Below, piece after piece: positions 1 to 45,686 of a DNA stretch of 64,000 bases. The notes under the pieces were generated by a model. The model was not told where the DNA came from and made no database searches. It was given only the letters and a program-made list of their open reading frames with translations. Numbering within the stretch: position 1 is the stretch's first letter; each line of letters opens with the position of its first letter. Position numbers and translations under genes: made by a program. The stretch comes from Pristiophorus japonicus (Eukaryota), in assembly GCF_044704955.1 (NCBI RefSeq), contig NC_091989.1:98270001-98334000 (forward strand), read 5' to 3'.

Positions 1-417
1 TCTCCGCAAAGATTTGAAATATGAAGAAAGATTGCTGTAATGGAGAAATTATATCATAATCATGTGAGAACAGTTTGTCTATTTTTTAAAAATTGTCCCT
101 CATGATGGATCATTCAAATTGTGTTTAGAAGAAAGGTTTAACACCGGGAGCTCGCGGATGAAATTGGTCTTCCGAAAATAAAATCGGTCACGATGTAAAA
201 CGGGTTGCCGATTCGTTATCACTCGTTTCGCGCTAACGCCGAAGAGCAATTTCTCTCCCGCACCCGGCGCGTGCTGTTACAAATGGTTAAAGAAGAAACA
301 AAAACGTGCAGTTTCGTTGAAAATCTATCTAGGTAATAATTGTTTACAGAATCAATAATAGTTATATTTCTGCGAAAAGCTTAATGACTCTGTGATCTAG
401 AGCCTCTTAGCAATTAA

Positions 418-570
418 AGATTTCTGTAATAAAAACAGAAAAGTCTGGAAATACTCAGCAGGCCAGGCAGCACCTGCGGAGAGAGAAACAGAGTTAATGC
501 TTTAAGTCGATGACCTTTAGTCAGAACTGGAAAAAGTTAGAGATGGAACAGAATTTAAGCAAGTACAGTG
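418..570 (-). mobile_element. Short interspersed repeat remnant, probably a Penelope-like element terminus (second copy ~28470-28570)
   Basis: AAACAGAAAA..CTGGAAATA..CAGCA...GGAGAGAGAAAC.GAGTTAATG is shared by both sites; the family assignment is from recall. Confidence 0.4.
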
Positions 571-663: not shown

Positions 664-837
664 ACGGAACAAATGGCAGCTGGTGACAGGCTGATCTGCG
701 CGACTATAGCATTGACTGGCTCAGAGAAAACAGCGAAATGCAAAAAAAGCGCTAGGAGCACACAATATGTCCAGCTGCAGACCAAAAAACAAAGAGGTGT
801 AACAGAGGTTGCGTACGCAGAAGCAAGGATTAATTAG
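664..837 (+). CDS. Terminal cytoplasmic exon of an upstream IgSF receptor paralog, with ITIM/ITSM-like motifs (TQYVQL, VAYAEA)
   Basis: Acceptor ggttttacag|ACG (phase 0); open to TAG at 835-837; homologous to the exon at 33994; peptide TEQMAAGDRLICATIALTGSEKTAKCKKSARSTQYVQLQTKKQRGVTEVAYAEARIN. Confidence 0.7.
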   Translation, partial: TEQMAAGDRLICATIALTGSEKTAKCKKSARSTQYVQLQTKKQRGVTEVAYAEARIN

Positions 838-1409
838 CAATATATTTTAGCTGGAGAATTCACATATTTGGTGTGTACTGATTGCATTCTGCTTCCACAT
901 CAACTCCACGCATATGTCTATTGTGCAATACCAACAGTCCGGGACGAAACCCATTCCAGTGATATATTAGAGAATGCAGTGTGTAGTTATTAGTTACTGT
1001 TCAATTATTTGATGAATTTTCTTTTAGCTGCTTTTACGAAAAATATAACTATCCTGACATAATTTAATGCTAAATCTGTTCTTTTTAACTGATGACCAAT
1101 CTTTTCACTTTCGATTGCAATGATATGCCAATAGCGTTGCCCTGCCTAATTATCATCATACGTGAATTCTATAATAATAGACGATCTACGATGTCTCTCA
1201 AATCAGCGATTTGTGCTCATTTTTGGCAAGTCAAACGGAAAAACCTCAGCTTTGATTTACGTATCGTATTTCCAAATTCTGATTTCAGTCGAGGAGACGC
1301 TCCTGATGTGAAACGGCTGAAGCTTCAGTCTATGGACTAATACATCAACCTACTGAACGTAGCTAGCAGTTGTTTTATGTCCTCTATAAAGAGCTGTATA
1401 GGCCAAGTG

Positions 1410-12785: not shown

Positions 12786-13033
12786 TAATATGTCCTTACT
12801 ATACAGTACAAATGCACACGAGGCCCATACTCGAGAGAAAGATCACTCTGTGACCAGTAACCTTTATTAGCCAGCACTGAACTGGAGAAGATGGGTGGAG
12901 CTTCCCCTTTTATACCTGAAAGTCCAGGTTAGGAGTATCTCCCACAAGTTCACCATCTAGTGGTCAGTGTTCTCACGGTGTACAACTTAGGTCAGTTTAT
13001 ACATGAATTAAAATGACAGTTGAATACATGGCA
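12786..13033 (-). repeat. Gypsy 3' LTR (248 bp)
   Basis: Adjacent polypurine tract (minus strand ACTTTGGGGGGAGGTGA, 13034-13050) followed by TG; homologous to the other two LTRs. Confidence 0.93.
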
Positions 13034-17263: not shown

Positions 17264-17482
17264 TAATATGTCCTTACTGCTCGAGAGAAGGTCACTCTGT
17301 GACCAGTAACCTTTATTAGCCAGCACTGAACTGGAGAAGATGGGTGGAGTTTTCCCTTTTATAGCTGAAAGTCCAGGTTAGGAGTGTCTCCCACAAGTTC
17401 AACACCTAGTGGTCAGTGTTCTCACGGTGTACAACTTAGGTCAGTTTATACATGAATTAAAATGACAGTTGAATACATGGCA
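17264..17482 (-). repeat. Gypsy middle LTR (219 bp, chimeric)
   Basis: Left part carries the variants of the 21713 LTR; right part carries the variants of the 12786 LTR. Confidence 0.92.
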
Positions 17483-20400
17483 TCACCTCCCCCCAAAGTC
17501 TTATTGGGATTACAGGTTAAATCTCTCTGATGGTTTACGCTCCCTTGTAGAGCGCCTGAGTTGGGGCTCCGGTTGTTGGGCACTGGCCTGAGTGTCTGCT
17601 GTTTGCGGTGCCTCAGGCCTGTCCGGACTGCCCACAGTGACTGGGCTCTCCTCCACTTAGTTCCGGTGTTCGGTCACGTGTGGTGGAGTGAACTCAACAA
17701 CGCATTCTTCCTCTGCTTCTTCTATGGGGTTGCTGAACCTCCTTTTTGTTTGATCCACGTGTTTGCGGCAGATTTGTCCATTGGTAAGTTTAACTACCAG
17801 AATCATATTCCCCTGTTTGGCAATCACAGTACCTGCGAACCATTTGGGCCCTGCAGTGTAGTTGAGGACAAAGACAGGGTCGTTGACATCAATACATCGC
17901 GCCCTCGCATTCCCGTCATGGTAGTCACATTGTGACCGGCGCCTGCTCTCAACAATTTCTTTCATGGTGGGGTGCATAACGGATAGCCTGGTTTTAAGCA
18001 TCCTTTTCATTAGCAGTTCTGCGGGTGGAATCCCTGGGAGCGAGTCTGGTCGGGATCTATTGGCCAACAGAAGGCATGATAAGCGGCTTTGTAGGGAACC
18101 CCCTTGGATTCTGAGCATTCCCTGTTTGATTATCTGCACTGCTCGTTCCGTCTGGTGTTTGAGGCCGGCTTGAACAGTGCCGTTCTGACATGGTTGATAC
18201 CATTTCCTGCCATGAAGTCCTGTAATTCAATGCTAGTAAAGCACGGGCCATTGTCACTGAATAAAATGTCCGGTAGACCATGGGTGGCGAACATTGCCCG
18301 TAGACTTTCTATCGTGGCAGAGGATGTGCTTGAATTGAGAATGTCACACTCAATCCATTTGGAGTAGGCATCTACGAGAACCAAGTACATTTTACCCATG
18401 AAAGGACCTGCGTAGTCCACATGGATGTGTGACCATGGCTTGGCGGGCCAGGACCAGGGGCTAAGTGGGGCTTCCCTGGGTGCATTGCCCAGCTGGGCAC
18501 ACGTGTTGCACCTGCAAACACAAAGTTCCAGGTCTGCATCTATCCCTGGCCACCAAACGTGTGACCTGGCAATTGCCTTCATCATAACAATGCCCGGGTG
18601 CTCATTGTGGAGTTCTCGGATGAATGCCTCTCTGACCATCTGGGGCATGACTACTTGGTTTCCCCATAGTAGGCAATCGGCCTGAATCGAGAGTTCATCC
18701 TTGCGCCTGTGAAATGGTTTAAATTCCTCAGGGAATGCCCCGTACGTGGCTGCCCAGTCCGCATTCAGGTCACATTTCTTGACTAAAGCCAGTAACGGGT
18801 CTCTATTTGTCCAGACGGGCTGTCACGGGTGAGCCTTCGCTTTCAAAAGCTTCAACATCCATGACCATCTCAGCAGCATGCTCGGTTGCCCCCTTGGTGG
18901 TGGCTAGTGGGTGCTTGCTGAGTGCATCAGCGCAGTTTTCAGTGCCCAGTCTATGCCGAATGGTATAGTCATAGGCGGCTAACGTGTGTGTCTACCTCTG
19001 TATGCGGGCCGATGCATTTGCATTCATGGCCTTGTTGTCGGCCAAAAGGGACATTAGGGGTTTGTGATCTATCTCCAGCTCAAAGTTCCTCAAACAGGTA
19101 CTGGTGCATTTTCTTTTCTGCATTTACATATGCAAGCGCTTCCTTTTCTACCATCCCATAGCCCCTTTCTGCGCGAGACAGACTTCTTGAGGCAGAAGCT
19201 ACTGGCTGTAACTGACCCTTGGTATTAACATGCTGCAACACACACCCGACCCCATAGAATGATGCATCACATGTTAAAACAAGTTTCTTACATGGGTCAT
19301 ATAGCTTCAACAGATCGTTGGAGCACAACAAATTGCGTGCACTATCAAAAGCCCTTTCTTGGCTGTGCCCCCCAGACCCATTCATGACCTTTGCGTAGGA
19401 GCACATGTAGCAGCTCTAACAGCGTGCTCAGTTTGGGAAGAAAGTTACCAAAATAGTTCAGGAGGCCCAGGAACGAATGCAGCTCCTTCGTGTTACAGAG
19501 TCTGGGTGCTCTCTGAATCGCTTCTGTTTTGGAAGTGGTAGGTCTGATCCCGTCTGCTGCTACCCTCATCCCCAGAAATTCTACCTCTGGAGCTAGGAAG
19601 ACGCACTTCGCTTTTTTCAGTCGCAGACCTACCCGGTCCAGTCTGCGTAGCACCTCCTCCAGGTTGTGGAGGTGTTCTTCAGTATCGGGACCCATAATGA
19701 CGACGTCGTCTTGAAAAACCACCATCCTTGGAATCGACATGAGGAGACATTCCATGTTTTGTTGAAAGATCGCGGCGGCCGAGCGAATCCCGAACGGACA
19801 TCTGTTGCACTCAAACAACCCCTTGTGTGTCGTGATGGTGGTCAGCTTCTTCGACTCACTCGCCAGCTCCTGGGTCATGTAAGCTGAGGTCAGGTCCAAT
19901 TTTGAAAAAAGTTTGCCACCAGATAGCGTTGCAAAGAGGTCCTCCGCTCTTGGTAGCAGGTACTAGTCTTGGAGTGACACCCGACTGATGGTGGCCTTGT
20001 AATCGCCATATTTCCTGACTGACCCATCCGCCTTGAGCATCAGCACAATCGGGCTTGCCCAGTCACTGAATTCGACTGGTGAGATGATGCCTTCCCTCAG
20101 CAGGCGATCCAATTCACCTTCTATCTTTTCCTGCATCATGTACGGCACTGCTCTGGCCTTGTGGTGTACTGGCCTGGCGTCCAGATTTATGTGAATCACT
20201 ACTTTGTCCGCATGAAAGTGCCAATGCCGGGTTGAAATAGTGAGTCAAATTTGTCCAGGACCTGTGAGCATGATATTCGCTCCACAGATGAAATTGCATT
20301 GACATCGCCCCATTTCCAGTTCATGACAGCAAGCCAACTCCTCCCCAGTAGTGCGGGACCGTCGCCCGGGACAATCCAGAGTGGCAACCTGTTCTCCGAA

Positions 20401-21712
20401 TCTTTGTGGGTCACGACTACCATGGCGCTGCCTAGCACCGGAATGATTTCCTTTGTATATGTCCATAACTGTGCATCAATCGGCAATAATTTTGGCCTCC
20501 TGGCCTTGGACGCCCACAACTTGTCGAACTGTTTGATACTCATCAGGGACTGGCTGGCCCCCGTGTCTAGCTCTATTGATACTGGGATGCCATTGAGGAG
20601 TACTTTCATCATTATCGGTGGCGTCCTGGTGTATGAACTGTTTTTGTGCTCCACATGAACTCGCTGAACTTCAGCTTCCAGCAAGTTCCCCCAGTGTCCA
20701 TTTGGCCTCGTAGGGCTTACATCGAGCCCGTCCTCCTCGTACTTCAACCTGGCTTCAGGCTTCCTGCACATACGCGCCAAGTGACCGCTGACGTTGCAGT
20801 TTCTGCAGGTATGTTGCTGATACCTGCAAGCTCTGGCTGTGTGTTTGCCTCCACACCTCCAACATGAGCCGTTGTTGGAAACAAAAGGTCCATTACCAGT
20901 CGATCATCTTTGACTGTCTCTGTAACTGTCCTTAAACACACCATTGACAGGTGTTGATGGCCCCATTACTAGCCGCATTGTCCCTTGTGATGGCATGAAT
21001 CGCTGTTCAGCTAGTCATTTTCTCTGTTGAATTCCCCCTCTGGGTTTGACTACATGCTCGGGCATGGCCGATTGCCTCTGTCTGCCTGGAGAACTGTGTG
21101 CCGTGTTAACAATGTTGACTCCCTGTCCATTTGCTGCATTTAAACCAAGATTTTTGTCAAACATCATTCTAGTCTCTTCCTCCCCGAGATAAATGTCTGG
21201 GCCATCAAAGCCGCCATTTCCAAGGTCAAGTCTTTGATCTCAATCAGTTTCCTGAAAACCCCAGTGTGCCCGATGCCCTCAATGAAAAAGTCTCACAGCA
21301 TCTCCTCTCTGCATGGATCTGGGAACTTACATAGGCTCGCCAGTCGCCGGAGATCTGCCACGAAGTCTGGAATGCTTTGCCCTTCTCGCCGCCGGTGCGT
21401 GTACAATCGATGTCTCACCATGTGCATGCTGCTCGCCGGTTTAAAGTGTTCCCCGATCAACTTACTGAGCTCTTCAAAAGTCTTGTCCGCCGGCTTCTCT
21501 GGCGCTAGAAGGTCCTTCATCAGGGAGTATGCCCTGGATCCACAAACTGGCAGGAGATGAGCCCTGCCTTTGTCGGCCGAATCCTGTCCCAGCCATTCCT
21601 TTGTGATGAAACTTTGCTGTAGTATCTCAATAAAATCGTCCCAATCATCACCAACATCTGTGCTGCTAGTGGCCATGCTCGTGTTGTTTAAATCCCAGCT
21701 TCTCATCGCCAA
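17483..21712 (-). pseudogene. Gypsy internal gag-pol, copy 2 (near-identical to copy 1)
   Basis: Same ORF set offset by 4449 bp, with the same disabling lesions. Confidence 0.93.
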
Positions 21713-21931
21713 TAATATGTCCTTACTGCTCGAGAGAAGGTCACTCTGTGACCAGTAACCTTTATTAGCCAGCACTGAACTGGAGAAGATGGGTGGAGTT
21801 TTCCCTTTTATAGCTGAAAGTCCAGGTTAGGAGTGTCTCCCACAAGTTCAACACCTAGTGGTCATTGTTCTCATGGTGTACAACTTAGGTCAGTTTATAC
21901 ATGGATTACAATGACAGTTGAATACATGACA
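21713..21931 (-). repeat. Gypsy 5' LTR (219 bp)
   Basis: Minus strand begins TGTCATGTATTC; flanked by TSD GATCC and the PBS. Confidence 0.93.
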
Positions 21932-23339
21932 GATCCTAACAGTAAACGCCCAAAACAGTTTTGGCCTGTTCCTGTTGGGCGTGAATCACAGAAAAAACGG
22001 TCCAGTTTGGAACCAATTTTCACTCTCACTGAGAGAAACCATAGGATAATTAGTGCAGGAGTGCAAAACAAAATTACTGGTCTACATGCCAGATTCTACT
22101 CAGGTTAGGGCTGAGCCATGTGGTTAATTCGTGCCTCTCTTGCCATGGATCGTGCTGACAGCATAACATTGGCTCTCTGTTATATGTAAGGAAATAGCAA
22201 ATCGATTCGTTATAAACAGAATTTTGTCATACATAGATACTACATAGATAAAGCAGGATATCGCCCCTGTTCTTAGCCCTCACATTCTTCACTGGGATAA
22301 ATGCAAAATTCACACTAACAGATTTTTAAAAGGAGGAAATAGAGTTTGTAGATCAGTTAAACTAAAAACAGAAACTTTTGCCGTGCCTGATCAGTAACCC
22401 CATAGCACCCCATTACCGCCAGCACAGGCACTAACGGGAGGCACAAAGCAGCCGAATTTTTCCCCGTTATATTTCATTGTTGAAACAAAGCGGTCCACAG
22501 CCAATGGATTTTTTTTGAAGTGCTAGCACTGTTTTGTCGACAAACAGAGCAGTCAATGTGAACACAACAAGGTCACACAAACAGCAAATATTTTGAATGG
22601 TCAGCATATTTTATGTTAACTTGGGAAGGACTGCTGACTGGGAAACTGGGAAAGCGGTGCGTTCTTCGTTAAAAATACCAAGGGGGCGGAGGTTACTTTT
22701 ACCTAAACTGGCAGTCGGTTCCTTAGTTAATCTTAAAGCTGACAGTTCAATTAAGGCAGAATTCCCTCAGTACCATATATTATATCAACGCACACTTCCT
22801 GTCAATTTTAATATTTATAATGGAAATTGCTTCTGTTAGTTTGTCAAGCTGTAAATAGACCTCTCCCCATCAGAAGCATTGCAGCGCCGCCACTAGCAGA
22901 TGGGCGTAATTGCAGCTGGATGTGTTTAACTTTGGGACATTTTCATTCTAAAAATACATATCGGAATTTACAATGCAGAATGTATATGACTTTGAATGAG
23001 TATGCCTGCAGAGATCCAAATATCACAAATAACCCTGCTTCACCTGATGACTACAATGCAATTTGAGTCGCTTTGTTGATTGTACTGTATTTTATGAAAT
23101 TTACCTTAACTTTTAAGAAAATGGCTGATGTGGACTTGCATAATAGAAGCATAGCCAGTGATTTATGATAAGAGGAGCTGCAACAAAATAGTCGGCCTTC
23201 ATGATGGGTGTTACATCATTTTGTGGAATATTTCAGCATTTCCTGTTACTGATCATTACTTAACCTTCATACAAAAAGAACGAGGACGAGAGTGGGTTAG
23301 CTCTATTGATAAAGGATGGAATCACTTAAATAGTGAGAA

Positions 23340-27671: not shown

Positions 27672-27732
27672 ATGTGGTCGACAGTGATGTTTCTGTTCCT
27701 GTTCCTGTCTCTCCCGGGGATCATTTACACAG
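27672..27732 (+). CDS. VJ-C1 receptor exon 1: signal peptide MWSTVMFLFLFLSLPGIIYT
   Basis: ATG, hydrophobic leader, phase-1 donor AG|gtacct. Confidence 0.88.
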
Positions 27733-27913
27733 GTACCTGTTTATTCTCCATTCCAACAGTCTCAATAAAAAAAATATGAATTAGTTACCACACCAGTTGA
27801 ATGAAATTTAGTTTGTCCATCTGTAATCTTTATCTTTTTCATTTCCATGTATAAATAGTGCCTGGTTCCGCATGGAATACAATTGACCAAACTTTGAATA
27901 TGTTTTCTAACAG

Positions 27914-28234
27914 CTGCTGGGCGTAGTTCGATCAGCGTGTCTCAAACTCCCGAACAAGTAATTAAATTAAGGGGGACAAATATCACCTTCTACTGCATAA
28001 TCCCTCTTTCTCATGACAATTCGGGGGTAGATGTGCGTTGGTGGAAACAGGGTGAGAATGAATATCTACAAACAGGAGCCGATAACAGAAAACGAGTTGG
28101 TGTCAAAAATAAAGGAGGCGGTTTCTTTGAGTTGCTGAACCTGACTATCCAGGACACTGGAATCTATCATTGCGCAGTGATCCGTCAGGGAACAATTATT
28201 GGAAATGGAACAGGATCACATCTAACTGTGATCG
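27914..28234 (+). CDS. VJ-C1 receptor exon 2: germline-joined V-set domain with J-like strand (NKp30/antigen-receptor-like)
   Basis: Acceptor ttttctaacag, donor G|gtaagt (phase 1/1); VSQTP, FYC, WW, DTGIYHC, GNGTGSHLTV. Confidence 0.95.
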
Positions 28235-28859
28235 GTAAGTGACCGGAGTGAGCGGGAAGGTCCACATGTACCAAATGTAACAAGGATGATATTTTGTCAT
28301 TGTTTGATTGTATCGTCTTTGATATTATAGAAAGTATATTTGTACATTTAGAGTGAATCTCTGCACACAATTGCTAATTATACCGCAAAGTATGACATAT
28401 CATTTGCTGAGTTGTGTACGTTGCCATCAATATTAACCATATTAAGTCATATGTTAAAAAGGCAAAATATTTTGGATGCTGGAAATCACAAATATAAACA
28501 GAAAATGCTGGAAATAGTTAGCACGTCAGTAGCATGTGTGGAGAGAGAAACCGAGTTAATGTTTCTGGTATCTCACCGATCAAAAGTAACATGTTACTGG
28601 AATCATCTCGAAATACAATTTTTACATCGGATTCCTAATAATGGACAAATGATGCGCACAAAATTAAAATACATTTATGACTTTCTGAAAATCTTTTCTA
28701 TTGATGCGCCGCTCCCGCCAAGAACACGGCACTATTGGGGAAACAGACAGGCCTAGAGTTAGTAACACCCAGGGAAATACTAAGGATACCATTCTTCTCC
28801 CATATCTTGTGTTTAGTATCCTCACAGTAACCTGATTTTCCCCATTCTCTCTTCCACAG

Positions 28860-29165
28860 CTGCCCCAACTCCATTGAAGATTGTCTCCAAGACATCCGAG
28901 ACAACTGTGTCTCTGACACTTGTGTGTGAAACGGCGGAGTTTTACCCGGGAGTTTTTACCCTCGTTTGGTATAGAAATGGCGTCGAAACCACAACTGGGA
29001 TAAATTCCACTACACGGCAGAACACTGAGGGGTTGTATAGGGTTTCCATTACTTTGGAAGAGAGGCAGCCTGTGCCGAACGGGGCTGTTTACATCTGTTT
29101 GGTGACTCATGCCTCCATCGGGAATCCCGCCATTGCCATCCACACTGTTATTAATTCTGACCCAG
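28860..29165 (+). CDS. VJ-C1 receptor exon 3: C1-set Ig domain
   Basis: Acceptor ctctcttccacag, donor G|gtacga (phase 1/1); LVC..FYP..LVWYRNG..YRVSITL..YICLVTH. Confidence 0.95.
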
Positions 29166-31344
29166 GTACGAGGTTAACGGGCGAAGAATTGCGGTCAGCT
29201 ACTGTTAAATTCTGAAAGGGTATTTCATAGAGTTTATACATATTGATAATCATAAATATAGTTTAAAAAGAAACTCCCGGGCAACATCAAAGCAAGGAGA
29301 AAATTAATGCTTCAATGTAAAATATTATTGACCCGGATCCGTTGTTAACCCGAAGAATTAAAATCGCCCTTTACCCAGTATCTGTCTGTTAAACCTCAGC
29401 AGTTTCCAATGTTAAAAGAAGTATGAACAGGCGGTTTATCTCTTCTATCCAATTATTTCCATTTCTTGCTTATTGCTCAACATTCAAACTTATCCCCTTG
29501 TTGAACTGAATTCATTGTTTCGCATTATCTGATTCCTAACATGAGGTGCAGGGCTAGAAGCGGCAGTTTGTTTGTCTAGTCTCCAGCCACTCCCAGTGCG
29601 GTTCCTGAATCATGCCTTTGATGGGCGATTCACTGTGAGGGTCTTTACACCGTCAATGACTCCCAACCATCAGCTCATGTCCTGTGTTCCCAGCTCTCAC
29701 CTTTCAGTTACGCAACGGCCTTCGGCCCCACGGTGCTGGATCAGTCCGGCCACCAAGGACACAGACTAAAATTTAATTATATTCCTAAATCTCAGCACGC
29801 CCACACGCGACAACATGATTAATAGTGGGTCGATCCTTCTTCCATTCTGTTGAAGCGTACATTCTCCTGCAATTTCCATGAACGAAATTGATTCCATCGT
29901 GTGGTCCTGGCCGCAGCTCTGCCTACACGCCTACCAGCCAACCAGTTTCCCCATCCCACATCCTCTCTCAATTCACCATCTGGCATCACCTCTCCAAAGC
30001 CTCTATCACCGAGTATATGTTGCCTTCCATCTTCCCACATACCTAAGATCGTAAACAAAGGCAAGAAATAAATATTAAATATATTAAAAATGGAACTGCT
30101 GTGAGAGCCGCTACACAACAATTGGAAGTATCTTAGGAGGGAAATAATGGAGATTTCATTCATTGGGAGTGAAACAGACAAAATGCAAAAAGTGCTGCAA
30201 AGACTTTTACAGACACCACAATGAATAAATTGTGTGACAATCATACAAATAGAAAGATTAAGAAAGAAGAAGGTGTAAGACGAAGATAGAGAGGGCAGCA
30301 CAAAAGGAATTTGCAAGTGGGAAAGAAGCAAAGATGCAATTGCAAGAAGCAATACCACAGGTGTTGGTGGTATTATAACCTCCAGAGTCAGCTTCTTGTT
30401 ATAGAATGTACTGTGCACAGCACCGCTGGAAATCCAAATATAAACTTATTTCCCATGGCTTGCTCCTGGTGAGTATGAGATTGTCCTGCTGGGTGGGAAG
30501 GAGAGTGGGTTTCAGGGCTGGGTAAGTCGGAGCCGTGGACTCCTGAACCGAATGAATTTGGAAATCATTTCACAAGAAACTGAAATCAAGGAAGTGTTTT
30601 TAAATGTTTGCTGGAATACTCGGGAAACTCATGGGAATATAAACGAACACATAAAATCCATGTTTCAATGTATAATAGAGCCGATGTGTTGTAAAATCGG
30701 TTATATCGTCCGCCATACAAACATTCTCAGTAAAATATTAGTCTTCAAATTCCTGTATTTGATAACATGAGGCTTATCTTTGTTATCCGAGTACATTTCA
30801 TATTTCGCTCATTGTTAATCTTTTTTGTTTCCATGTTAATGTTTTATTTATTACCGTTCCTGGTTTTCCTTCATCTGGACGATTACCAGGAGCTGCGGTC
30901 AAGGTGTCTCGGGTTTCTCCCAGTGCCGTTCCCGATCCTGATCCGTGTTTTGGCGATTCCGTGTGAAGAGTTCTGAAATTAACCCTTTAGCCAACGTTAC
31001 CCTCATCCCTCCATGACACAGCGGGTTGAAGTGGGATCTGTCTCGTACAGTCCATTTAAACTGTGCTCGCTGTCAGACTGCTGTTCAGATGGTTATATCA
31101 TTTTATTAATAACAGTTTACCTCACCAGATAATAATTAATAAACCACCGCACGTTGATCTCCTTTACATTTCGCGAAATTGCTACTTCGCTAAACAACAG
31201 ATAGGTGAACTGCGGGTTTAACCGATTCCTGCAATCCGGCATTCTGTACAGGGGACGGCGAAAGAATTGTTACCCAATTGCCCGCAATTACATCAGACAA
31301 TAAGTAAAGAACACAAGGGTAGTGAAGGGTAAGAGCAAACCATT

Positions 31345-31503
31345 TATAGAAATAAGAAACATAGAAAATAGGTGCAGGAGTAGGCCATTCGGCCCTCCGA
31401 GCCTGCACCGCCATTCAATGAGTTCATGGCTGAACATGCAACTTCAGTACCCCATTCCTGCTTTCACGCCATAACCCTTGATCCCCCTAGTAGTAAGGAC
31501 TAC
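31345..31503 (-). mobile_element. Young CR1 3' stub in intron 3
   Basis: Near-identical to 39505-39660. Confidence 0.9.
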
Positions 31504-31793
31504 TATAGAAACATTTGGCCCAGGGAATCATTTATCTCATATACTACCTCTCCCACACTATTCCCTCTTCGCAGTTTATGCCATAATTGTCTCATCCATT
31601 GGATGCATAAGATCTTCCCAATATTATATCTAAAAAAGAATAAGTTTTTAATTAAAACATCCTCATTACCTTTCTATACTCCCGAGTTACTAAATGCGTC
31701 AACAGTTCAACCAATGAACTCTGTGAGGCCTCTTTATAGGAAACACCCGCCACAACGTACAACTTAATATATTTGCTCCTATTATTCTTGCAG

Positions 31794-31907
31794 ATTGTGT
31801 CGGTATCGTCCCTTACTACTCGGGTTTTAGATATGCGGTGGGTGGATTAGCGTTCCTGCTGATCCTGATCATCATTGGGATGCACTGTCAATTGCATGTT
31901 AATAAAG
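31794..31907 (+). CDS. VJ-C1 receptor exon 4: stalk and transmembrane DCVGIVPYYSGFRYAVGGLAFLLILIIIGMHCQLHVNK
   Basis: Acceptor ttattcttgcag, donor G|gtatga, phase 1/1, hydrophobic helix in frame with C1. Confidence 0.88.
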
Positions 31908-31997
31908 GTATGATCTATTGTAAGACATTTGATTTTCATAAAAAATTCCAGAGAGCTGTGGGGACTTAAAGTTGAAGGCAGTATTAACTGTTTTCAG

Positions 31998-32131
31998 GGA
32001 GCGCTAATTGTTCCAAACAGCAACAGATTCAGGATTTTAAAAAAGCATTACTCGCAGGATTTAAATTAAAAGGTCTGATCATCCGGATATTTAGAACAGA
32101 AATTTCCACGTCGCAGCAAGGTGAACGGAAG
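31998..32131 (+). CDS. Candidate cytoplasmic exon 5 (phase 1 to 0; alternative in-frame acceptor at 32100)
   Basis: Acceptor ctgttttcag; open frame to AAG|gtatct; supplies the phase change needed to reach the later exons. Confidence 0.35.
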
Positions 32132-32340
32132 GTATCTTCAATAGGTGTGAGACTCCAAGCCGGAATGTTTGTATACCATTTCTGGTCGCTGCCGTGGGAT
32201 TTCAAACACTGACAGCACAATCTGAAATGAAAATCATGACCGGTTTTATATCACCTCTAGAAATGTCTTTGAAATCATTGATATCGAAACGTGGTACATA
32301 TTTCAATCATTCATTTTGATTTAATTTCATTACTTCATAG

Positions 32341-32382
32341 GGAAAAAATGCTGTAAAGGGACCGAACCGGCGTGAGGAGCTG
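32341..32382 (+). CDS. Candidate cytoplasmic mini-exon 6 (GKNAVKGPNRREEL in phase 0; GKKCCKGTEPA* if joined directly to the TM exon)
   Basis: Acceptor ttcattacttcatag, donor CTG|gtacgt. Confidence 0.5.
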
Positions 32383-32456
32383 GTACGTTAATTCATTCAT
32401 CCTCGCAAGGGATTTAATTTTGAAGAAAGATTGATACCTTATCGACAGTTTGTCAT

Positions 32457-33070
32457 TGTTGTAGGCATTAGGCACCTGCTGAATATATAAAACACTAGAC
32501 ATTAGGCACCTGCTGAATATATCTAAACTCATATAAGTTTAAAGCTGCCACATATAAAATGGCTGCCCAAGCATGATGGGAACCCCGTTAGTCAAGTAAT
32601 GAACTGGGGCTGACCGAGCAATGACCGAGCGATGACCCTGTGAGGTCCACTACCAGGAATGCCTTGGATACAAGATAATTATAATGAACCAGTGATTTCA
32701 CACAGCCGAAGTCCAAGGAAGAGAGATAAGGGGAGAACCTGCCTCACATAACGAGGTCATTAATCAGCCCGAGCTGACAAAAATTGAACATACAGCCCCT
32801 GAGGTACCAGGGGAATTCTATTGGGTTAAAGAAACCTATATGGAATCTATAATCGTTATGATTGGATTGTGTCCAGCCGAAGTGGGCTGAGTAACTGTAA
32901 AGAACTATTGTAAAACATATAAATATCGATGAGTTTCCTTGTTCGGAGGAGAGAAGTGCCTGGATCCAGTCCTGAGGCTTCCTCCCTGCTGGCATTAATA
33001 AAGGCCGCATTGGCGTTGGAACCGACTCTGAGTGTTGAGTGATTCTTCTGATAAAACACTAACACTAACA
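32457..33070 (+). mobile_element. Solo LTR (614 bp) in the receptor intron
   Basis: TG...CA ends; TSD GTCAT (32452-32456, 33071-33075); TATAAA 32918; AATAAA 32997; empty site in the paralog at ~53-58. Confidence 0.88.
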
Positions 33071-33993
33071 GTCATAATCACGTCAGAAAAGTTTGTCTAT
33101 TTCTTGGAAGTATTTGCCCTGGTTAATCGGCCATTCAAATCGTATTCAGATAAATATCTGTCGTCAGCGGGCAAGGATTTAATCCTCGGCGCGATATTGG
33201 TTTTCGGTAAAAAAAAATGCGAGTGCGGTGTAAAACCGTTGTCTAATCGTTATCGCCGGTTTCGCCCTACCGCCGAAGATCAATTTCAGCCGTACCCCCG
33301 GTGCGTTGCTGGTTTAATTAACTAGCAGACAAGACAACTGTCAGCTTCGTTTAAAACGTACCCAAGTAATAACTGTTTCTAAATTCAATATTATTTATAC
33401 TTGGGGAAATCCTTTAATAAATCCGTGCTCTGGAACTATCGCTCATTTAAACATTTCTGTAGCATTGTATTGGAAAACGAATATTGGCAGCTTTAATTAT
33501 TAGTAATAACGACCACAGTCCACATGGGTCTCAACATTCGCACTTGTATAACTACATTAATTCTGCTTTCTGCCCCGTGTATCTAGCCTATGTTGTTCTG
33601 ATCACTGTTTCACCAGTAGTTTGTAAACTGGTGAAGGCAAATGAACTAGCCACATAACAAAATACATCATTGTTTCTGGCCCATGCGGGAAGAAAATGCT
33701 CCGATTGTTGATGAGCTGCAGTAGCTATGAGCAGATCTAAGTAAACTACAAGATGTAAATTTGAAGAGGAAAGGACTGTGTAGCATCAGGCGAGGCGGGG
33801 TAGCGGATCAGAAAGACACAAATCACCAGTGCACAACCTACATCTATGCGATAACTGAGACTACAAGGTTGGTTGACTCGGGTTTTATAATGTACCTCAA
33901 GCTGTCTGAGTGTTATTCTGATGATTGTTTTCGGCAAGTTCAAAAATTTGGCAAAACGACCTATTTACAATATTTCCAAACAAAGGTTTACAG

Positions 33994-34149
33994 ACAAAAC
34001 AAGGAATCTGCGCGGCTCTCGATTTGTCAGGCTCAAAAACTCGGGGAAATCCAAACATAACCAAACACAGAGTGACATATTTTAATATATCCTTGAATAT
34101 GGGTGTAATAGTTTGTTATTGCTTAAATAGCCGAGGAGTTTTGATTTAA
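33994..34149 (+). CDS. Terminal cytoplasmic exon (possibly decaying): TKQGICAALDLSGSK...VTYFNI...*
   Basis: Acceptor ggtttacag| homologous to that of exon 664-837; AATAAA at 34251. Confidence 0.55.
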   Translation, partial: TKQGICAALDLSGSKTRGNPNITKHRVTYFNISLNMGVIVCYCLNSRGVLI

Positions 34150-39600: not shown

Positions 39601-42600
39601 TCAGTACCCCATTCCTGCTTTCTCGACATACCCCTTGATCCCCCTAGTAGTAAGGACTTCATCAAACTCTCTTTTGAATATATTTAGTGAATTGGCCTCA
39701 ACAACTTTCTGTGGTAGAGAATTCCACAGGTTCACCACTCTCTGGGTGAAGAAGTTTCTCCTCATCTCGGTCCTAAATGGCTTACTCCTTATCCTTAGAC
39801 TGTGATCCCTGGTTCTGGATTTACCCAACATTGGGAACATTCTTCCTGCATCTAACCTGTATAAACCCGTCAGAATTTTAAATGTTTCTATGAGATCCCC
39901 TCTCATTCTTCTGAACTCCAGTGAATACAAGCCCAGTTTATCCAATCTTTCTTGATATGTCAGTCCCGCCATCCCGGGAATCAGTCAGGTGAACCTCCGC
40001 TGCACTCCCTCAATAGCAAGCATGTCCTTCCTCAAGTTAGGAGACCAAAACTGTACACAATACTCCAGGTGTGACCTCACCAAGGCCCTGCCCAACTGTA
40101 GTAACACCTCCCTGCCTCTGTACTCAAATCCCCTCGCTATGAAGGCCAACATGCCATTTGCTTTCTTAACCGCCTGCTGTATCTACATGCCAACCTTCAA
40201 TGACTGATGTACCATGACACCCAGGTCTCGTTGCACCTCCCCTTTTCCTAATCTGTCACCATTCAGATAATAGTCTGTCTCTCTGTTTTTACCACCAAAG
40301 TGGATAACCTCACATTTATCCACATTATACTTCATCTGCCATGCATTTGCCCACTCACCTAACCTATCCAAGTCACTCTGCAGCCTCATAGCATCCTCCT
40401 CGCAGCTCACACTGCCACCCAACTTAGTGTCATCCGCAAATTTGGAGATACTACATTTAATCCCCTCTTCTAAATCAACAATGTACAATGTAAACAGCTG
40501 GGGCCCCAGCAAAGAACCTTGTGGTACCCTACTAGTCACTGCCTGCCATTCTGAAAAGTACCATTTACTCCTACTCTTTGCTTTCTGTCTGCCAACCAGT
40601 TCTCAATCCATGTCAGCACACTACCCCCAATCCCATGTGCTTTAACTTTGCACATTAATCTCTTGTGTGGGACCTTGTCTAAAGCCTTCTGAAAGTCCAA
40701 ATACACCACATCAACTGGTTCTCCCTTGTCCACTCTACTGGAAACATCCTCAAAAAATTCCAGAAGATTTGTCAAGCATGATTTTCCTTTCACAAATCCA
40801 TGCTTACTTGGACGTTTCATGTCACCTCTTTCCAAATGCGCTGCTATGACATCCTTAATAATTGATTCCATCATTTTACCCACTACCGATGTCAGGCTGA
40901 CCGGTCTATAATTCCCTGTTTTCTCTCTCCCTCCTTTTTTAAAAAGTGGGGTTACATTGGCTACCCTCCACTCCATAGGAACTGATCCAGAGTCAATGGA
41001 ATGTTGGAAAATGGCTGTCAATGCATCCACTATTTCCAAGGCCACCTCCTTAAGTACTCTGGGATGCAGTCCATCAGGCCCTGGGGATTTATCGGCCTTC
41101 AATCCCATTAATTTCCCCAACACAATTTCCCGACTAATAAGGATTTCCCTCAGTTCCTCCTTCTTACTAGACCCTCTGACCCCTTTTATATCTGGAAGGT
41201 TGTTTGTGTCCTCCTTAGTGAATTCCGAACCAAAGTACTTGTTCAATTGGTCTGCCATTTCTTTGTTCCCCATTATGACTTCCCCTGATTATGACTGCAG
41301 AGGACTTACGTTTGTCTTTACCAACCTTTTTCTCTTTACATATCTATAGAAACTTTTGCAGTCCGTCTTAATGTTCTCTGCAAGCTTCCTCTCGTACTCT
41401 ATTTTCCCTGCCCTAATCAAACCCTTTGTCCTCCTCTGCTGAGTTCTAAATTTCTCCCAGTCCCTGGGTTCACTGCTATTTCTGGCCAATTTGTATGCCA
41501 CTTCCTTGGCTTTAATACTATCCCTGATTTCCCTTGATAGCCACGGTTGAGCCACCTTCCCTTTTTTATTTTTACGCCAGTCAGGGGTGTACATTTGTTG
41601 TAGTTCATCCATGCAGTCTCTAAATGTCTGCCATTGCCCATCCACAGTCAACCTCTTAAGTATTATTCGCCAATCTATCCTAGACAATTCACGCCTCATA
41701 CCTTCAAAGTTACCCTTCTTTAAGTTCTGGACCATGGTCTCTGAATTAACTGTTTCATTCTCCATCCTAATGTAGAATTCCACCATATTATGGTCACTCT
41801 TTCCCAAGGGGCCTCGCACAACGGGATTGCTAATTAATCCTCTCTCATTACACAACACCCAGTCTAAGATGACCTCCCCCCTAGTTGGTTCCTCGACATA
41901 TTGGTCTAGAAAACCATCCCTTATGCACTCCAGGAAATCCTCCTCCACCGTATTGCTTCCAGTTTGGTTAGCCCAATTTATATGCATATTAAAGTCACCC
42001 ATGATAACTGCTGCACCCTTATTGCATGCATCCTTAATTTCCTGTTTGATGCCCTCCCCAACATCACTACTACTGTTTGGAGGTCTGTACACAACTCCCA
42101 CTAACGTTTTTTGCCCTTTGGTGTTCTGCAGCTCTACCCATATAGATTCCACATCATCCAAGCTAATGTCCTTCCTAACTATTGCATTAATCTCCTCTTT
42201 AACCAGCAGTGCTACCCCACCTCCTTTTCCTTTTATTCTATCCTTCCTGAATGTTGAATACCCATGGATGTTGAGTTTCCAGCCATGATCATCCTGGAGC
42301 CACGTCTCTGTAATCCCAATAACATCATATCTATTAACATCTATTTGCACAGTTAATTCATCCACCTTATTACGGATACTCCTTGCATTAAGGCACAAAG
42401 CCTTCAGGCTTGTTTTTTTAACACCCTTTGTCCTTTTAGAATTATGATGTAGTGTGACCCTTTTTATTTCTTGCCTTTGTTTACTCGGCCTTCCACCATT
42501 GCTTTTTACCTTTCTACCATCTGTTTCTGACTCCATATTACTCCGCCCTATCTCGCTGCATAGGTTCCCATCTCCCTGCCATATTAGTTTAAACACTCCC

Positions 42601-42602
42601 AA
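39601..42602 (-). pseudogene. CR1 ORF2 (APE endonuclease + RT), broken by a few frameshifts/stops
   Basis: LCLNARSI, GITETW, MGDFN, SDHNMV, YLDFQKA, PQGSLLGP, FADDTKL. Confidence 0.95.
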
Positions 42603-43496
42603 ACTGCATTAGCAAATGTTACCCCCAGGACATCAGTTCCAGTCCTGCCCAATTGCAGACCATCCCTTTTGTACAGGTCCCACTTCCCCCAGAACTTGCT
42701 CCAATGTCCCAGGAATTTGAATCCCTCTCTCTTGCACCCCTGCTCAAGCCACATATTTATTCTAACTATCCTGCTCCCTCTACTCTGATTAGCATGTAGT
42801 ACTGGTAGCAATCCAGAGATTACTACCTTTGATGTCCTACTTTTTAATTTAACTCCTAGCTCGCTAAATTCAGCGTATAGGACCTCTTCCCACTTCTTAC
42901 CTATATCGTTGGTACCTACATGTACCATGTTCACCCTCCCTCTCCAGAATGCTCTGCAGCCACTCCGAGACATCCTTGACCCTTGCACCAGGGAGGCAAC
43001 ATACTATCCTGGAGTCTCGGTTGCAGCTGCAGAAACTCCTATCTATTCCCCTTACAATAGAGTCCCCTATCACTATAGCTCTCCCACTCTTTTTCCCGCC
43101 CTTCTGTGCAGCAGAGCCACCCATGGTGCCATGAACCTGGCTGCTGGTGCCTTCCCCTGGTAAGTCATCTCCCCCAACAGTACCCAAAACGGTATATCTG
43201 TTTTGGAGGGAGATGACCGCAGGGGACTCCTGCACTACCTTCCTGCTCTTGCCTTGTCTCTTGGTCACCCATTCACTATCTGTCCTAACCCTTACCTGCG
43301 GTGTGACCAACTCACTAAATGTGCTATCCACAACATTCTCAGCATCGCGCATGCTCCAGAGTGAGTCCATCCGCAGCTCCAGTGCCATCATGCGGTCTGT
43401 CAGGAGCTGCAGCTGGACTCACTTCCCGCACACAGCATCCCTGACTTCCCACATAGCACAGTAGGAGCATGACACGGGTCCGAGCTCTCCTGCCAT
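42584..43496 (-). pseudogene. CR1 ORF1 (zinc finger/coiled coil + SGNH esterase-like domain), disrupted
   Basis: VIGDSIVRG, CCLPGA, VHVGTND, DGLQL. Confidence 0.9.
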
Positions 43497-44187: not shown

Positions 44188-45686
44188 CTCCTCAACCGAC
44201 TTCTTCCCGTGGCTGAGGAGCTTCTCCTGGAGTCATAGTGAAGATTTCGTCCCCTACGGGCAAAATGGACATGCTTTTTGCAGCGCGACAATTACAGGAA
44301 AAATGCAGGGAACAGTGCCAGCCCTTATACATAGCCTTCTTCGACCTTACAAAGGCCTTTGACATTGTCAACCGCGAGGGTCTATGGAGCATCCTCCTCC
44401 ATTTCGGATTACCTCAAAAGTTCATCACCATCCTCCGCCTGCTCCACGATGACATGCAGTCTGTGATCCGTACCAGCGGACCCATCACAGACCCAATCCA
44501 CGTCCGGAACAAGTTAATCGCCCCAACCCTCTTCTCAATCTTTCTCGCCGCCATGCTCCACCTCACAGTCAACAAGCTCCCTGCTGGAGTGGAACTAAAC
44601 TACAGAACCAGTGGGAACGTGTTCAACCTGCGTCGTCTCCAGGCCAGATCCAAGACCACCCCAACCTCTGTCTTCAAGCTACAGTACACGGACGACGCCT
44701 GCATCTGCGCACATACAGAGGCTGCACTCAGGACATAGTCGACATATTTACTGAGGCGTACGAAAGCATGGGCCTTACGCTAAACATCCGTAAGATGAAG
44801 GTCCTCCACCAGCCTGTCCTCATCACACAGCACTGCGCCCCAGTCATCAAGGTCCACAACGCGGCCCTGGACAACATGGACCACTTTCCATATCTCAGGA
44901 GCCTCCTATCAACAAGCGCAGGCATTGACGACGAGATCCAACACCACCTCCAGTGCACCAGTGCAGTCTTCAGCTACCTGAGGAAAAGAGTGTTTGAAGA
45001 CCAGGCCCTCAAAACTGCCACCAACCTCATGGTCTACAGAGCTGTAGTAATACCTGCCCTCTTGTATGGCTCAGAGACATGGACCATGTACAGTAGACAC
45101 CTCAAGTTGCTGGAGAAATATCAGCAGCAATGTCTCCGCAAGATCCTACAAATCCCCTGGGAGCATAGGTGCACCAACATCAGTGTCCTCATTCAGGCTA
45201 ACATCCCCAGCATTGAAGCACTGACCACATTCGATCAGCTCCGCTGGGCAGGCCACATAACCCGCATGCCAGACATGAGACTTCCAAAGCAAATGCTCTA
45301 CTCGGAGCTTCTTCGTGGCAAACAAGCCAAAGGTGGGCAGTGGAAATGCTACAACGACACCCTCAAAGCCTCCCTGACAAAGTGCAACATCCCCACCGAC
45401 ACCTGGGAGTCCCTGGCGCAAGACCGCCCTAAGTGGAGGAAGTGCATCCGAGAAGGCACTGAGCACCTCGAGTCTCAACGCCGAGAGCATGCAGAAATCA
45501 AGCGCAGGCAGCGGAAAGAGTGTGTGGCAAACTAGTCCCACTCACCCCTTCCCTCAACGTCTATCTGTCCCACCTCTGACAGAGTCTGTTGCACTCGTAT
45601 TGGACTGTTCGGCCATCAAAGAACTCACTTTAGGAATGGAAGCAAGTCTTCCTCGATTCCGAGAGACTGCCTATGATGATGATGAT
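44188..45686 (+). mobile_element. RTE LINE, 3' half (RT)
   Basis: FFDLTKAFD, LQYTDD, LLYGSETW; (GAT)n tail. Confidence 0.95.

What the first reader, a model, noticed from the sequence alone, without database searches (positions are those of the whole stretch)
27672..34149. Intact non-rearranging VJ-C1 antigen-receptor-like gene
Seen: leader, V, C1 and TM exons with canonical splice sites, all phase 1, forming an uninterrupted 267-codon frame. The V exon already contains a J-like G strand (GNGTGSHLTV; compare NKp30 GTGNGTRLVV), and I saw no RSS around it. Known: V(J)+C1 is the TCR/Ig light-chain architecture, and germline-joined VJ-C1 genes (shark NARL, Xenopus VJC1, PRARP) are discussed as relatives of the pre-RAG antigen-receptor ancestor. 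Inference: this is a member of such a family, or an undescribed NKp30/SIRP-like lineage.
Basis: partly seen in the sequence, partly recalled or inferred. Interest (0 to 1): 0.85.

Follow-up and report, generated by a model that had tools for sequence, protein, structure and literature searches.

The report
Shark SIRP-like VJ-C1 receptor gene
This is a real gene for a cell-surface immune receptor with one variable-type and one constant-type immunoglobulin domain, but it is one member of a large family already predicted in many shark, ray and chimaera genomes, here in an 'activating' form that has lost its inhibitory tail, not a unique relic of the antigen-receptor ancestor.

Summary
Leader, single-exon VJ, C1 and stalk/TM exons lie at the stated places, with canonical AG/GT sites. 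All are phase 1 and give 267 open codons. No RSS stands out above background.

The gene is not a singleton. The V exon finds about 90 representative V-C1(-TM) proteins, and every named one is chondrichthyan. NCBI auto-names them SIRP-beta-1-like, PTPNS1-like, tapasin-related-like and similar.

Separate V and C1 trees both place the gene in one elasmobranch orthogroup: Heterodontus, Scyliorhinus, Mustelus, Chiloscyllium and several rays.

"Intact" is only partly right.
- The exon after the TM exon is frameshifted, with a stop at 32373-75.
- Two ITIM-type exons further downstream are decayed.
- The TM carries an Arg, as in the short-tailed relatives.
- It therefore reads as the activating partner of an ITIM-bearing lineage.
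- The terminal exon of a second family member lies at 664-840.

The closest solved relatives of the orthologue are UrIg2 and SIRP-alpha. Human NKp30 is not close. In catshark, sawfish and white shark the family does not sit on the MHC chromosome.

No RNA data could be obtained, so splicing is unverified.

Verdict: a new member of a known kind, of moderate interest.

The parts
27672..27732 (+). Leader exon: ATG, 20 codons plus 1 nt of a split leader, phase-1 donor.
   Evidence: Hydrophobic signal sequence; donor CAG|GT.
27914..28234 (+). Single-exon VJ (V-set) domain ending in the J-like G strand GNGTGSHLTV. No flanking RSS.
   Evidence: V-set E 1.8e-9; AF2 pLDDT 89.8.
28860..29165 (+). C1-set constant domain exon.
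   Evidence: (C1-set E 6.3e-11).
31794..31907 (+). Stalk/transmembrane exon. It has a membrane-proximal Cys, an Arg at the outer end of the TM (motif FRYAVGG), and a juxtamembrane HC.
32341..32382 (+). First cytoplasmic exon (AG at 32339-40, GT at 32383-84).
- In the spliced phase-1 frame it reads G-KKCCKGTEPA-stop, with the stop at 32373-75.
- The frame homologous to relatives (..GPNRREEL) is shifted by one base.
- This is consistent with one extra A in the run 32343-48.
   Evidence: The single-base insertion is inferred from the protein alignment and the exon phases; it was not seen in DNA of relatives.
33715..33816 (+). Decayed relic of the first ITIM-type exon. It has two in-frame stops and has lost the tyrosine codons.
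   Evidence: tblastn E 0.002-0.004 against P0021 and P0160. (tail HMM i-E 0.0075 at 33712-33810).
33991..34149 (+). Relic of the terminal cytoplasmic exon.
- It carries a deletion over the first ITIM tyrosine.
- It is no longer reachable in frame from the TM exon.
   Evidence: (E 0.04 against P0009), and (no significant match to P0181).
664..840 (+). Terminal cytoplasmic exon of a second family member lying upstream. It is an open frame (acceptor AG 662-663, stop 838-840) and resembles the C-terminus of Heterodontus P0181.
   Evidence: (tail HMM i-E 1e-14), and (BLASTP E 4e-11, ending at the same C-terminus).
1..430 (+). Non-coding DNA homologous to 32983-33470: the 3' parts of two tandem gene copies.
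   Evidence: long identical runs; about 67% column identity over the whole alignment.

Best explanation
The gene encodes a type I membrane receptor of a large cartilaginous-fish family of SIRP-like, germline-joined VJ-C1 immunoglobulin-superfamily receptors. The family comes in paired inhibitory (ITIM-rich tail) and activating (short tail, basic TM residue) forms.

Shown:
- The exon structure and the V-set and C1-set domain types.
- Membership of the family, and of one elasmobranch orthogroup within it.
- Truncation of the tail, with decayed ITIM-type exons behind it.
- A neighbouring paralogue's terminal exon.

Inferred mechanism:
- The V domain binds a conserved, probably host-encoded, ligand. 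Its CDR1-like stretch is conserved between shark and ray orthologues.
- The C1 domain and the stalk cysteine make a disulfide-linked dimer.
- The TM arginine recruits an ITAM adaptor of the DAP12/FcR-gamma/CD3-zeta kind, so ligand binding activates the cell.
- ITIM-bearing relatives with similar ectodomains would inhibit through SH2 phosphatases.
- The activating form arose from an ITIM-bearing ancestor by a one-base frameshift, decay of the tail exons, and gain of the TM Arg.
For: Family and domains:
- V exon against 1.84 billion representatives: 165 hits. The best is Heterodontus francisci P0001 (E 5e-49, 79% identity). About 90 hits have V-C1 architecture.
- All named members are chondrichthyan.
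- The V tree puts the gene in a 9-row clade (SH-aLRT 99) with P0001, P0003, P0164, P0179 and the ray proteins P0002, P0182, P0167, P0169. The C1 tree gives the same set at support 89.

Lost inhibitory tail:
- Rays of this clade carry ITIM tails. The sharks P0164 and P0179 and the window gene have an Arg in the TM and short tails.
- Across 75 family members, a basic residue at the TM start goes with absence of ITIMs: 23/12 against 9/31, odds ratio 6.6, p 2e-4. The rows are not phylogenetically independent.
- Exon 5 is frameshifted with a stop, and ITIM-exon relics lie downstream.
- A paralogue's terminal exon lies at 664-840.

Dimer:
- Homodimer model of the orthologue P0164 ectodomain: ipSAE 0.40 against a best control of 0.00. 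The three runs agree in at least 84% of contacts, and partner pLDDT is at least 80.
- That mark was reached by 21 of 30 proteins solved as pairs of one chain and by 0 of 23 solved as single chains. On eukaryotes it was 17 of 29 (animals 7 of 16), and a pass may come from memory of solved Ig dimers.
- The interface lies on the C1 domain and brings Cys231 of each copy together.
Against: - No RNA evidence exists. No run was listed, so the junctions, the use of exon 5 and expression itself are all unverified.
- If exon 5 still splices to the downstream relics, its stop would lie upstream of further junctions and could make the transcript an NMD target.
- The C1 end branch is rather long (0.27 against a median of 0.16; 63% identity to the nearest relative against 76% for V). 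That could mean relaxed constraint.
- The one-base insertion is inferred from protein alignments only, because DNA of relatives could not be fetched.
- The dimer pass may reflect memory of solved Ig dimers, and it was run on the orthologue, not on the window protein.
- The ligand and the adaptor are unknown.
Confidence: 0.6

Rival explanations
1. The gene is a decaying copy, a pseudogene in the making. An ITIM-bearing receptor gene suffered a frameshift in its first cytoplasmic exon. The tail exons have already decayed, and the still-open ectodomain and TM exons are simply younger casualties-to-be.
For: - Frameshift and stop in exon 5.
- In-frame stops in the ITIM exon relic.
- A possible NMD configuration.
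- A longer-than-median C1 branch.
- No expression data.
- Heavy transposon load around and inside the gene.
Against: - 267 codons across four exons are open, with all eight splice signals canonical.
- All invariant family residues of V and C1 are kept.
- The TM Arg sits at the column where other short-tailed family members have it, and is absent from ITIM forms. That is the expected signature of a selected activating form, not of drift.
- The shark orthologues P0164 and P0179 have the same short-tail plus Arg design.
Confidence: 0.22
2. The gene is a member of the shark NCR3 (NKp30) family, that is, a relative of the MHC-linked natural cytotoxicity receptor, retaining a primordial C1 domain.
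For: - The VJ-type V has a GNGT-containing G strand and a TM Arg, as in NKp30 (the sequence, compared with NKp30 from my own knowledge).
- Some family members are auto-named after the NKp30 ligand B7-H6.
- Multi-copy NCR3 genes are reported in sharks (PMC12227049).
- The key paper, Kinlein et al. 2021, could not be read, so overlap with their gene set is not excluded.
Against: - Human NKp30 is not among the best 60 solved-structure hits of the V exon or of the family V profile. Its fold match is Z 12.5 at rank 41, against Z 14.2 for the top match, a skate IgNAR V domain.
- The family's chromosome differs from the MHC chromosome in three species: catshark 198.79 Mb against chr13 ending near 163.4 Mb, sawfish 53.95 Mb against chr34 near 19.8 Mb, and white shark 193.5 Mb against chr19.
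- Separate 'NCR3' genes are annotated beside AIF1 on the MHC chromosome of white shark and catshark.
Confidence: 0.1
3. The gene is a direct, slowly evolving relic of the pre-RAG antigen-receptor precursor, closer to TCR/Ig than any other non-rearranging gene, in the way proposed for UrIg and UrIg2.
For: - Split leader, single-exon VJ, C1, stalk Cys and a basic TM residue recall a TCR chain.
- UrIg2 is the best solved hit of the orthologue P0164 (E 1.4e-17).
- The V exon's best solved single-domain hits are IgNAR and TCR V domains.
Against: - SIRP-alpha scores the same as UrIg2 (E 1.6e-17).
- The family is a fast birth-and-death multigene family with ITIM/activating pairs, typical of innate paired receptors.
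- No linkage to Ig/TCR or MHC genes is seen in the window.
- Fold searches do not discriminate between candidate relatives.
Confidence: 0.05

Closest known systems
SIRP family (SIRP-alpha/PTPNS1, SIRP-beta-1, SIRP-gamma) of tetrapods
   Same: - An N-terminal VJ-like V domain followed by C1-set domain(s).
- Paired inhibitory (multi-tyrosine ITIM tail) and activating (basic TM residue, short tail) members with similar ectodomains.
- SIRP-alpha is the joint best solved sequence match of the orthologue P0164 (E 1.6e-17, one colinear V+C1 stretch), and it ranks 4th for the family profile.
- NCBI auto-names most members after SIRP.
- From my own knowledge, SIRP-beta-1 is a disulfide-linked homodimer that signals through DAP12.
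   Different: - One C1 domain, not two.
- The basic residue is an Arg at the outer end of the TM, not a mid-membrane Lys.
- Members were found only in cartilaginous fish, as a large expanded cluster.
- Orthology, synteny with the SIRP locus and CD47 binding are all untested.
UrIg and UrIg2 (non-rearranging shark VJ-C1 genes; PMC12227049, PDB 9dmx)
   Same: - Split leader, germline-joined single-exon VJ and C1-type constant domain.
- UrIg2 is the top solved hit of the orthologue (E 1.4e-17) and 2nd for the family profile.
- A homodimer is known for UrIg2 and predicted for the orthologue here.
   Different: - UrIg has three C1-type domains and only a secreted form. UrIg2 has nine C domains in nurse shark. 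Here there is one C1 plus a TM.
- UrIg and UrIg2 are described as single genes, linked to the MHC and to the Ig/TCR complex respectively. Here there is a large paired-receptor family on another chromosome.
NKp30 / NCR3 (including the multi-copy NCR3 genes of sharks)
   Same: - A non-rearranging VJ-type V domain.
- An Arg at the TM boundary, suited to ITAM adaptors.
- Multigene status in sharks.
   Different: - Tetrapod NKp30 has no C1 domain.
- Human NKp30 is not a close sequence match and is only a mid-rank fold match.
- Shark NCR3 genes are annotated in the MHC class III region beside AIF1, whereas this family lies on another chromosome in catshark, sawfish and white shark.
TCR chains and Ig light chains
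   Same: V(J)-C1 architecture, split leader, phase-1 introns, a stalk cysteine, and a basic residue in the TM (as in TCR chains).
   Different: - The V and J parts are one exon with no RSS.
- Many germline paralogues carry ITIM tails.
- Sequence scores to Ig light chains are about 17-20 bits below those to SIRP-alpha and UrIg2.

Membership tests
Cartilaginous-fish SIRP-like VJ-C1 paired-receptor family (NCBI 'PTPNS1-like / SIRP-beta-1-like / tapasin-related-like' models) | Leader, one V-set domain with a J-like G strand, one C1-set domain, and a TM exon with the ..VGGL..IIIG..C motif. | tested here: met
   The TM exon aligns to 14 relatives. Architecture table.
Cartilaginous-fish SIRP-like VJ-C1 paired-receptor family (NCBI 'PTPNS1-like / SIRP-beta-1-like / tapasin-related-like' models) | V and C1 exons each nest inside the family tree, next to the same orthologues. 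| tested here: met
   V clade at SH-aLRT 99. C1 clade at 89 with the same species set.
Cartilaginous-fish SIRP-like VJ-C1 paired-receptor family (NCBI 'PTPNS1-like / SIRP-beta-1-like / tapasin-related-like' models) | Clustered multigene arrangement. | tested here: met
   A second member's terminal exon lies at 664-840, with duplicated 3' DNA. In each species the relatives listed share one chromosome-sized contig.
SIRP family (tetrapods) | A V domain followed by two C1-set domains. | tested here: not met
   There is only one C1 exon between V and TM, and no further Ig exon in the window.
SIRP family (tetrapods) | Closest sequence relationship to SIRP among characterised proteins. | tested here: inconclusive
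   SIRP-alpha ties with UrIg2 as the best solved hit of the orthologue. No phylogeny with SIRP sequences could be built.
SIRP family (tetrapods) | Paired ITIM form and basic-TM form. | tested here: met
SIRP family (tetrapods) | Synteny with the SIRP locus; CD47 as ligand. | not testable with these tools
NCR3 / NKp30 | Location in the MHC class III region beside AIF1. | tested here: not met
   This applies to the relatives only. The family contigs are 198.79 Mb (catshark), 53.95 Mb (sawfish) and 193.5 Mb (white shark). The MHC chromosomes end near 163.4 Mb, 19.8 Mb and about 116 Mb. LOC119970986 lies outside the chr13 gene-ID block. The window itself cannot be placed.
NCR3 / NKp30 | A V domain specifically similar to NKp30. 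| tested here: not met
   NKp30 is not in the best 60 solved hits of the V exon or of the V profile. Fold match Z 12.5, rmsd 2.8, 101 residues aligned, rank 41.
NCR3 / NKp30 | A single V ectodomain without a C domain (tetrapod form). | tested here: not met
   A C1-set exon is present.
UrIg / UrIg2 | A VJ domain followed by three or more C1-type domains. | tested here: not met
   There is one C1 exon only. Definitions from PMC12227049.
Rearranging antigen receptors (TCR, IgL) | V and J as separate segments flanked by RSS. | tested here: not met
   V and J-like parts form one open exon. There is no RSS above background.

The most novel reading that the evidence does not exclude
This family would be a formally undescribed, chondrichthyan-wide lineage of VJ-C1-TM receptors with these features:
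- one C1 domain, a stalk cysteine and a basic TM residue, so TCR-chain-like in outline;
- distinct from the MHC-linked NCR3 genes and from UrIg and UrIg2;
- co-orthologous to tetrapod SIRPs.

That would add a third, membrane-bound and dimer-forming class of non-rearranging VJ-C1 genes to the discussion of how antigen receptors arose. The window would show an inhibitory-to-activating switch caught with its relic exons still in place.
Probability: 0.3. Interest if true: 0.6.

Novelty: new member of a known kind. Interest (0 to 1): 0.38.

Why it matters
Single-exon VJ genes joined to C1 domains are sought as relatives of the gene that the RAG transposon split (PMC12227049).

This finding shows that cartilaginous fish carry not one such gene but a large, fast-evolving paired-receptor family of that design, off the MHC chromosome. 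The window gene is an ordinary activating member of it. That lowers the claim of a unique ancestor-like gene.

It also offers three useful things:
- a clean example of how an activating receptor is made from an inhibitory one (a frameshift, decayed ITIM exons still visible, and gain of a TM arginine);
- a tandem neighbour that keeps the tail exon;
- a family that deserves to be included, next to NCR3, SIRP and UrIg/UrIg2, in V and C1 phylogenies of antigen-receptor origins.

Tried and rejected
- RNA evidence: the look-up of sequencing runs listed no run, so read laying could not be used.
No DNA of orthologues was obtained, so there is no dN/dS, no exon-phase check and no synteny.
- Papers not held: Kinlein 2021, Flajnik 2012, Ohta & Flajnik 2015 and the UrIg 2023 paper.
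- Kiwi hits P0142 and P0147, tried as a bridge to NKp30: they are CTLA-4-like in the solved-structure search and have only uncharacterised reptile relatives. Rejected.
- ESM Atlas search: generic V-set clusters only.
- Profile against solved structures with the V alignment: swamped by multi-domain Ig proteins.
- Fold searches of V and C1: all Ig-type neighbours are effectively tied and do not discriminate between candidate relatives.
- A bacterial-type promoter scan of the 5' flank is irrelevant to a vertebrate gene.
- The joined (spliced) protein was not built or searched. Exons were searched singly by reference, and the full-length orthologue P0164 stood in where a whole chain was needed.

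Full report
**Observation.**
- Leader exon 27672-27732, VJ exon 27914-28234, C1 exon 28860-29165, stalk/TM exon 31794-31907.
- Each is bounded by canonical AG and GT, and every junction is phase 1.
- Translated one by one, they give 20, 106, 101 and 37 whole codons plus the split codons. That is 802 nt, or 267 open codons plus one base.
- The V exon ends in GNGTGSHLTV. Pfam V-set covers model positions 1-108 of 109 (E 1.8e-9), and the next exon is C1-set (E 6.3e-11).
- A permissive RSS scan found nothing beside the V exon beyond the window's background of 0.42 weak matches per kb.
- AlphaFold models of the two domains are confident, with pLDDT 89.8 and 87.4.
Exons were searched singly by reference.

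**It is one of many.**
- The V exon, scored against 1.84 billion representative proteins, found 165 relatives. About 90 have the same V-C1(-TM) layout.
- Every one that carries a name is from a shark, ray or chimaera: Heterodontus francisci, Scyliorhinus, Mustelus, Chiloscyllium, Stegostoma, Heptranchias, Carcharodon, Pristis, Mobula, Hypanus, Hemitrygon, Leucoraja, Narcine and Callorhinchus.
- The names are an automatic medley: SIRP-beta-1-like, PTPNS1-like, tapasin-related-like, CD276 homolog, NCR3-ligand-1-like and Ig lambda-like.
- The only non-chondrichthyan single-V hits I named, two kiwi proteins, are CTLA-4-like and uninformative.
- Within each species, the members listed share one chromosome-sized contig.

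**Orthologues.** I built separate trees for the V and C1 exons (family members only, IQ-TREE quick search).
- The V exon sits in a 9-row clade (SH-aLRT 99) with Heterodontus P0001 (76% identity), Chiloscyllium P0003, Scyliorhinus P0164, Mustelus P0179 and four ray proteins.
- The C1 exon falls with the same set at support 89.
- The gene is therefore a member of an elasmobranch-wide orthogroup, and its V and C1 exons share one history.

**The tail.**
- The exon after the TM exon (32341-32382) reads G-KKCCKGTEPA-stop in the spliced frame.
- The frame that matches relatives (..GPNRREEL, as in P0161 and P0162) is one base off. With the phases of the neighbouring exons, this points to one extra A in the run 32343-48. 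That step is inferred, because no DNA of relatives could be fetched.
- Further downstream, 33715-33816 matches the first ITIM-type exon of relatives but has two in-frame stops (tblastn E 0.002-0.004; tail HMM i-E 0.0075).
- 33991-34149 is the position of the last exon. It has a deletion over the first ITIM tyrosine and no remaining significant similarity to Heterodontus P0181.
- No splice choice that I examined restores an ITIM tail.
- The same HMM found an open terminal exon of another family member at 664-840 (i-E 1e-14). It is 40% identical to the C-terminus of P0181 and ends at the same residue.
- Window 1-430 is homologous to 32983-33470. Two family genes therefore lie head to tail, about 27 kb apart.

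**Activating design.**
- The TM exon has an Arg at the outer end of the membrane span (FRYAVGG).
- Short-tailed relatives have an Arg in the same column: P0004, P0164, P0179, P0011 and others. ITIM-bearing relatives have Gly, Cys or Tyr there.
- Over 75 members, a basic residue at that place goes with lack of ITIMs (odds ratio 6.6, p 2e-4, rows not independent). Median tail length is 33 residues against 108.
- In the gene's own orthogroup the rays keep ITIM tails and the sharks have the Arg/short-tail form. This fits the relic exons: an inhibitory ancestor became an activating receptor.
- A stalk cysteine lies a few residues after the C1 domain in the window gene and in P0164 and P0179.
- A homodimer model of the P0164 ectodomain passed the tool's mark. 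The ipSAE was 0.40 against a best control of 0.00. The runs agree in at least 84% of contacts, and partner pLDDT is at least 80.
- That mark was reached by 21 of 30 proteins solved as pairs of one chain and by 0 of 23 solved as single chains. On eukaryotes it was 17 of 29, and a pass may come from memory of solved Ig dimers.
- The modelled interface is on the C1 domain and the two Cys231 touch. This supports a disulfide-linked dimer but does not show one, and it was run on the orthologue.

**Comparison with known families.**
- The orthologue P0164 finds UrIg2 (E 1.4e-17) and SIRP-alpha (E 1.6e-17, one colinear V+C1 stretch) as its best solved relatives. SIRP-gamma follows, and Ig light chains come about 17-20 bits lower. 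The family profile gives the same picture.
- Human NKp30 is not among the best 60 hits of the V exon or of the V profile. It is a mid-rank fold match (Z 12.5, rmsd 2.8, 101 residues, rank 41). The top match, a skate IgNAR V domain, scores Z 14.2.
- C1 fold neighbours are all close: MHC II beta2, IgNAR C, IgL C, TCR C-beta, UrIg2, SIRP-gamma and B7-H6, with Z 13.6 to 12.4.
- Verissimo et al. 2023 annotate 'NCR3' genes beside AIF1 on the MHC chromosome: five in white shark (chr19) and one in catshark (chr13).
- The present family lies on contigs of 193.5 Mb, 198.79 Mb and 53.95 Mb in white shark, catshark and sawfish. The MHC chromosomes end near 116, 163.4 and 19.8 Mb. A catshark family gene ID also lies outside the chr13 ID block.
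- So the family is not the MHC-linked NCR3 cluster in those species. It has one C1 domain, not the two of SIRPs or the three or more of UrIg and UrIg2. I therefore call it SIRP-like by how it works and by best similarity, not a proven SIRP orthologue.
- From my own knowledge, and untested here, the four-tyrosine tail pattern of the inhibitory members resembles that of SIRP-alpha.

**Limits.**
- No RNA run was listed.
- The key shark NCR3 paper and three others are not held.
- Reference NKp30 and SIRP sequences could not be brought into a tree.
- The window has no single-copy neighbours, only retroelements and a satellite, so its own chromosome is unknown.

**Verdict.** This is a real gene of known kind, an activating member of a cartilaginous-fish SIRP-like VJ-C1 paired-receptor family, with a truncated tail and a tandem paralogue. 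Interest is moderate. The most novel reading still open is that the family as such has not been formally described and belongs in the antigen-receptor-origin debate.

Noticed in passing
window 12839-22036 (- strand ORFs): A tandem array of a retroelement with a 4449-bp period. Copies of a 300-nt unit sit at 12839, 17288 (98% identical) and 21737 (70%). Near-identical broken pol ORFs (integrase zinc-binding and core domains, reverse transcriptase) are repeated twice.
   Followed up: partly
window 46150-62480: A 16-kb G+C-rich stretch (GC about 0.6, GC skew about +0.6) of short repeats that read as endless ..GESESGRVRESRRAGEFGRV.. ORFs in several frames. It is a satellite, also flagged by another first-stage note (s1-874540).
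   Followed up: no
window 40183-43391 (-) and 44238-45535 (+): LINE fragments. One has a 437-aa endonuclease ORF (Exo_endo_phos) followed by a reverse-transcriptase ORF; the other is a second RT-like fragment on the other strand.
   Followed up: partly
window 28455-28487 (- strand, V-C1 intron): The odd C-terminal end of the Heterodontus francisci gene model P0001 (..DFQHPQYFAFI..) matches this intronic stretch at 82% identity (tblastn E 0.005). This suggests the public model runs into a repeat shared by both genomes.
   Followed up: no
window 431-515 and 28490-28570: By eye, an element of about 80 nt (..ctggaaata..gagagagaaac.gagttaatg..) recurs upstream of the neighbour's last exon and inside the V-C1 intron. 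It is probably a SINE or a LINE tail.
   Followed up: no
window 31796-31840: The stalk/TM motif YYSGFRY is shared almost exactly with Scyliorhinus P0004, which belongs to a different V clade. The orthologue P0164 instead has YLWAIRC. This may reflect exon exchange or gene conversion of activating TM exons between family lineages.
   Followed up: partly
window 664-840: In the neighbour's open terminal exon the first ITIM-position tyrosine is a Cys (..RLICATIAL..), as it is in the relic exon of the studied gene (..GICAALDL..). Heterodontus P0181 also lacks it. The later tyrosine motifs (TQYVQL, VAYAEA) remain.
   Followed up: partly
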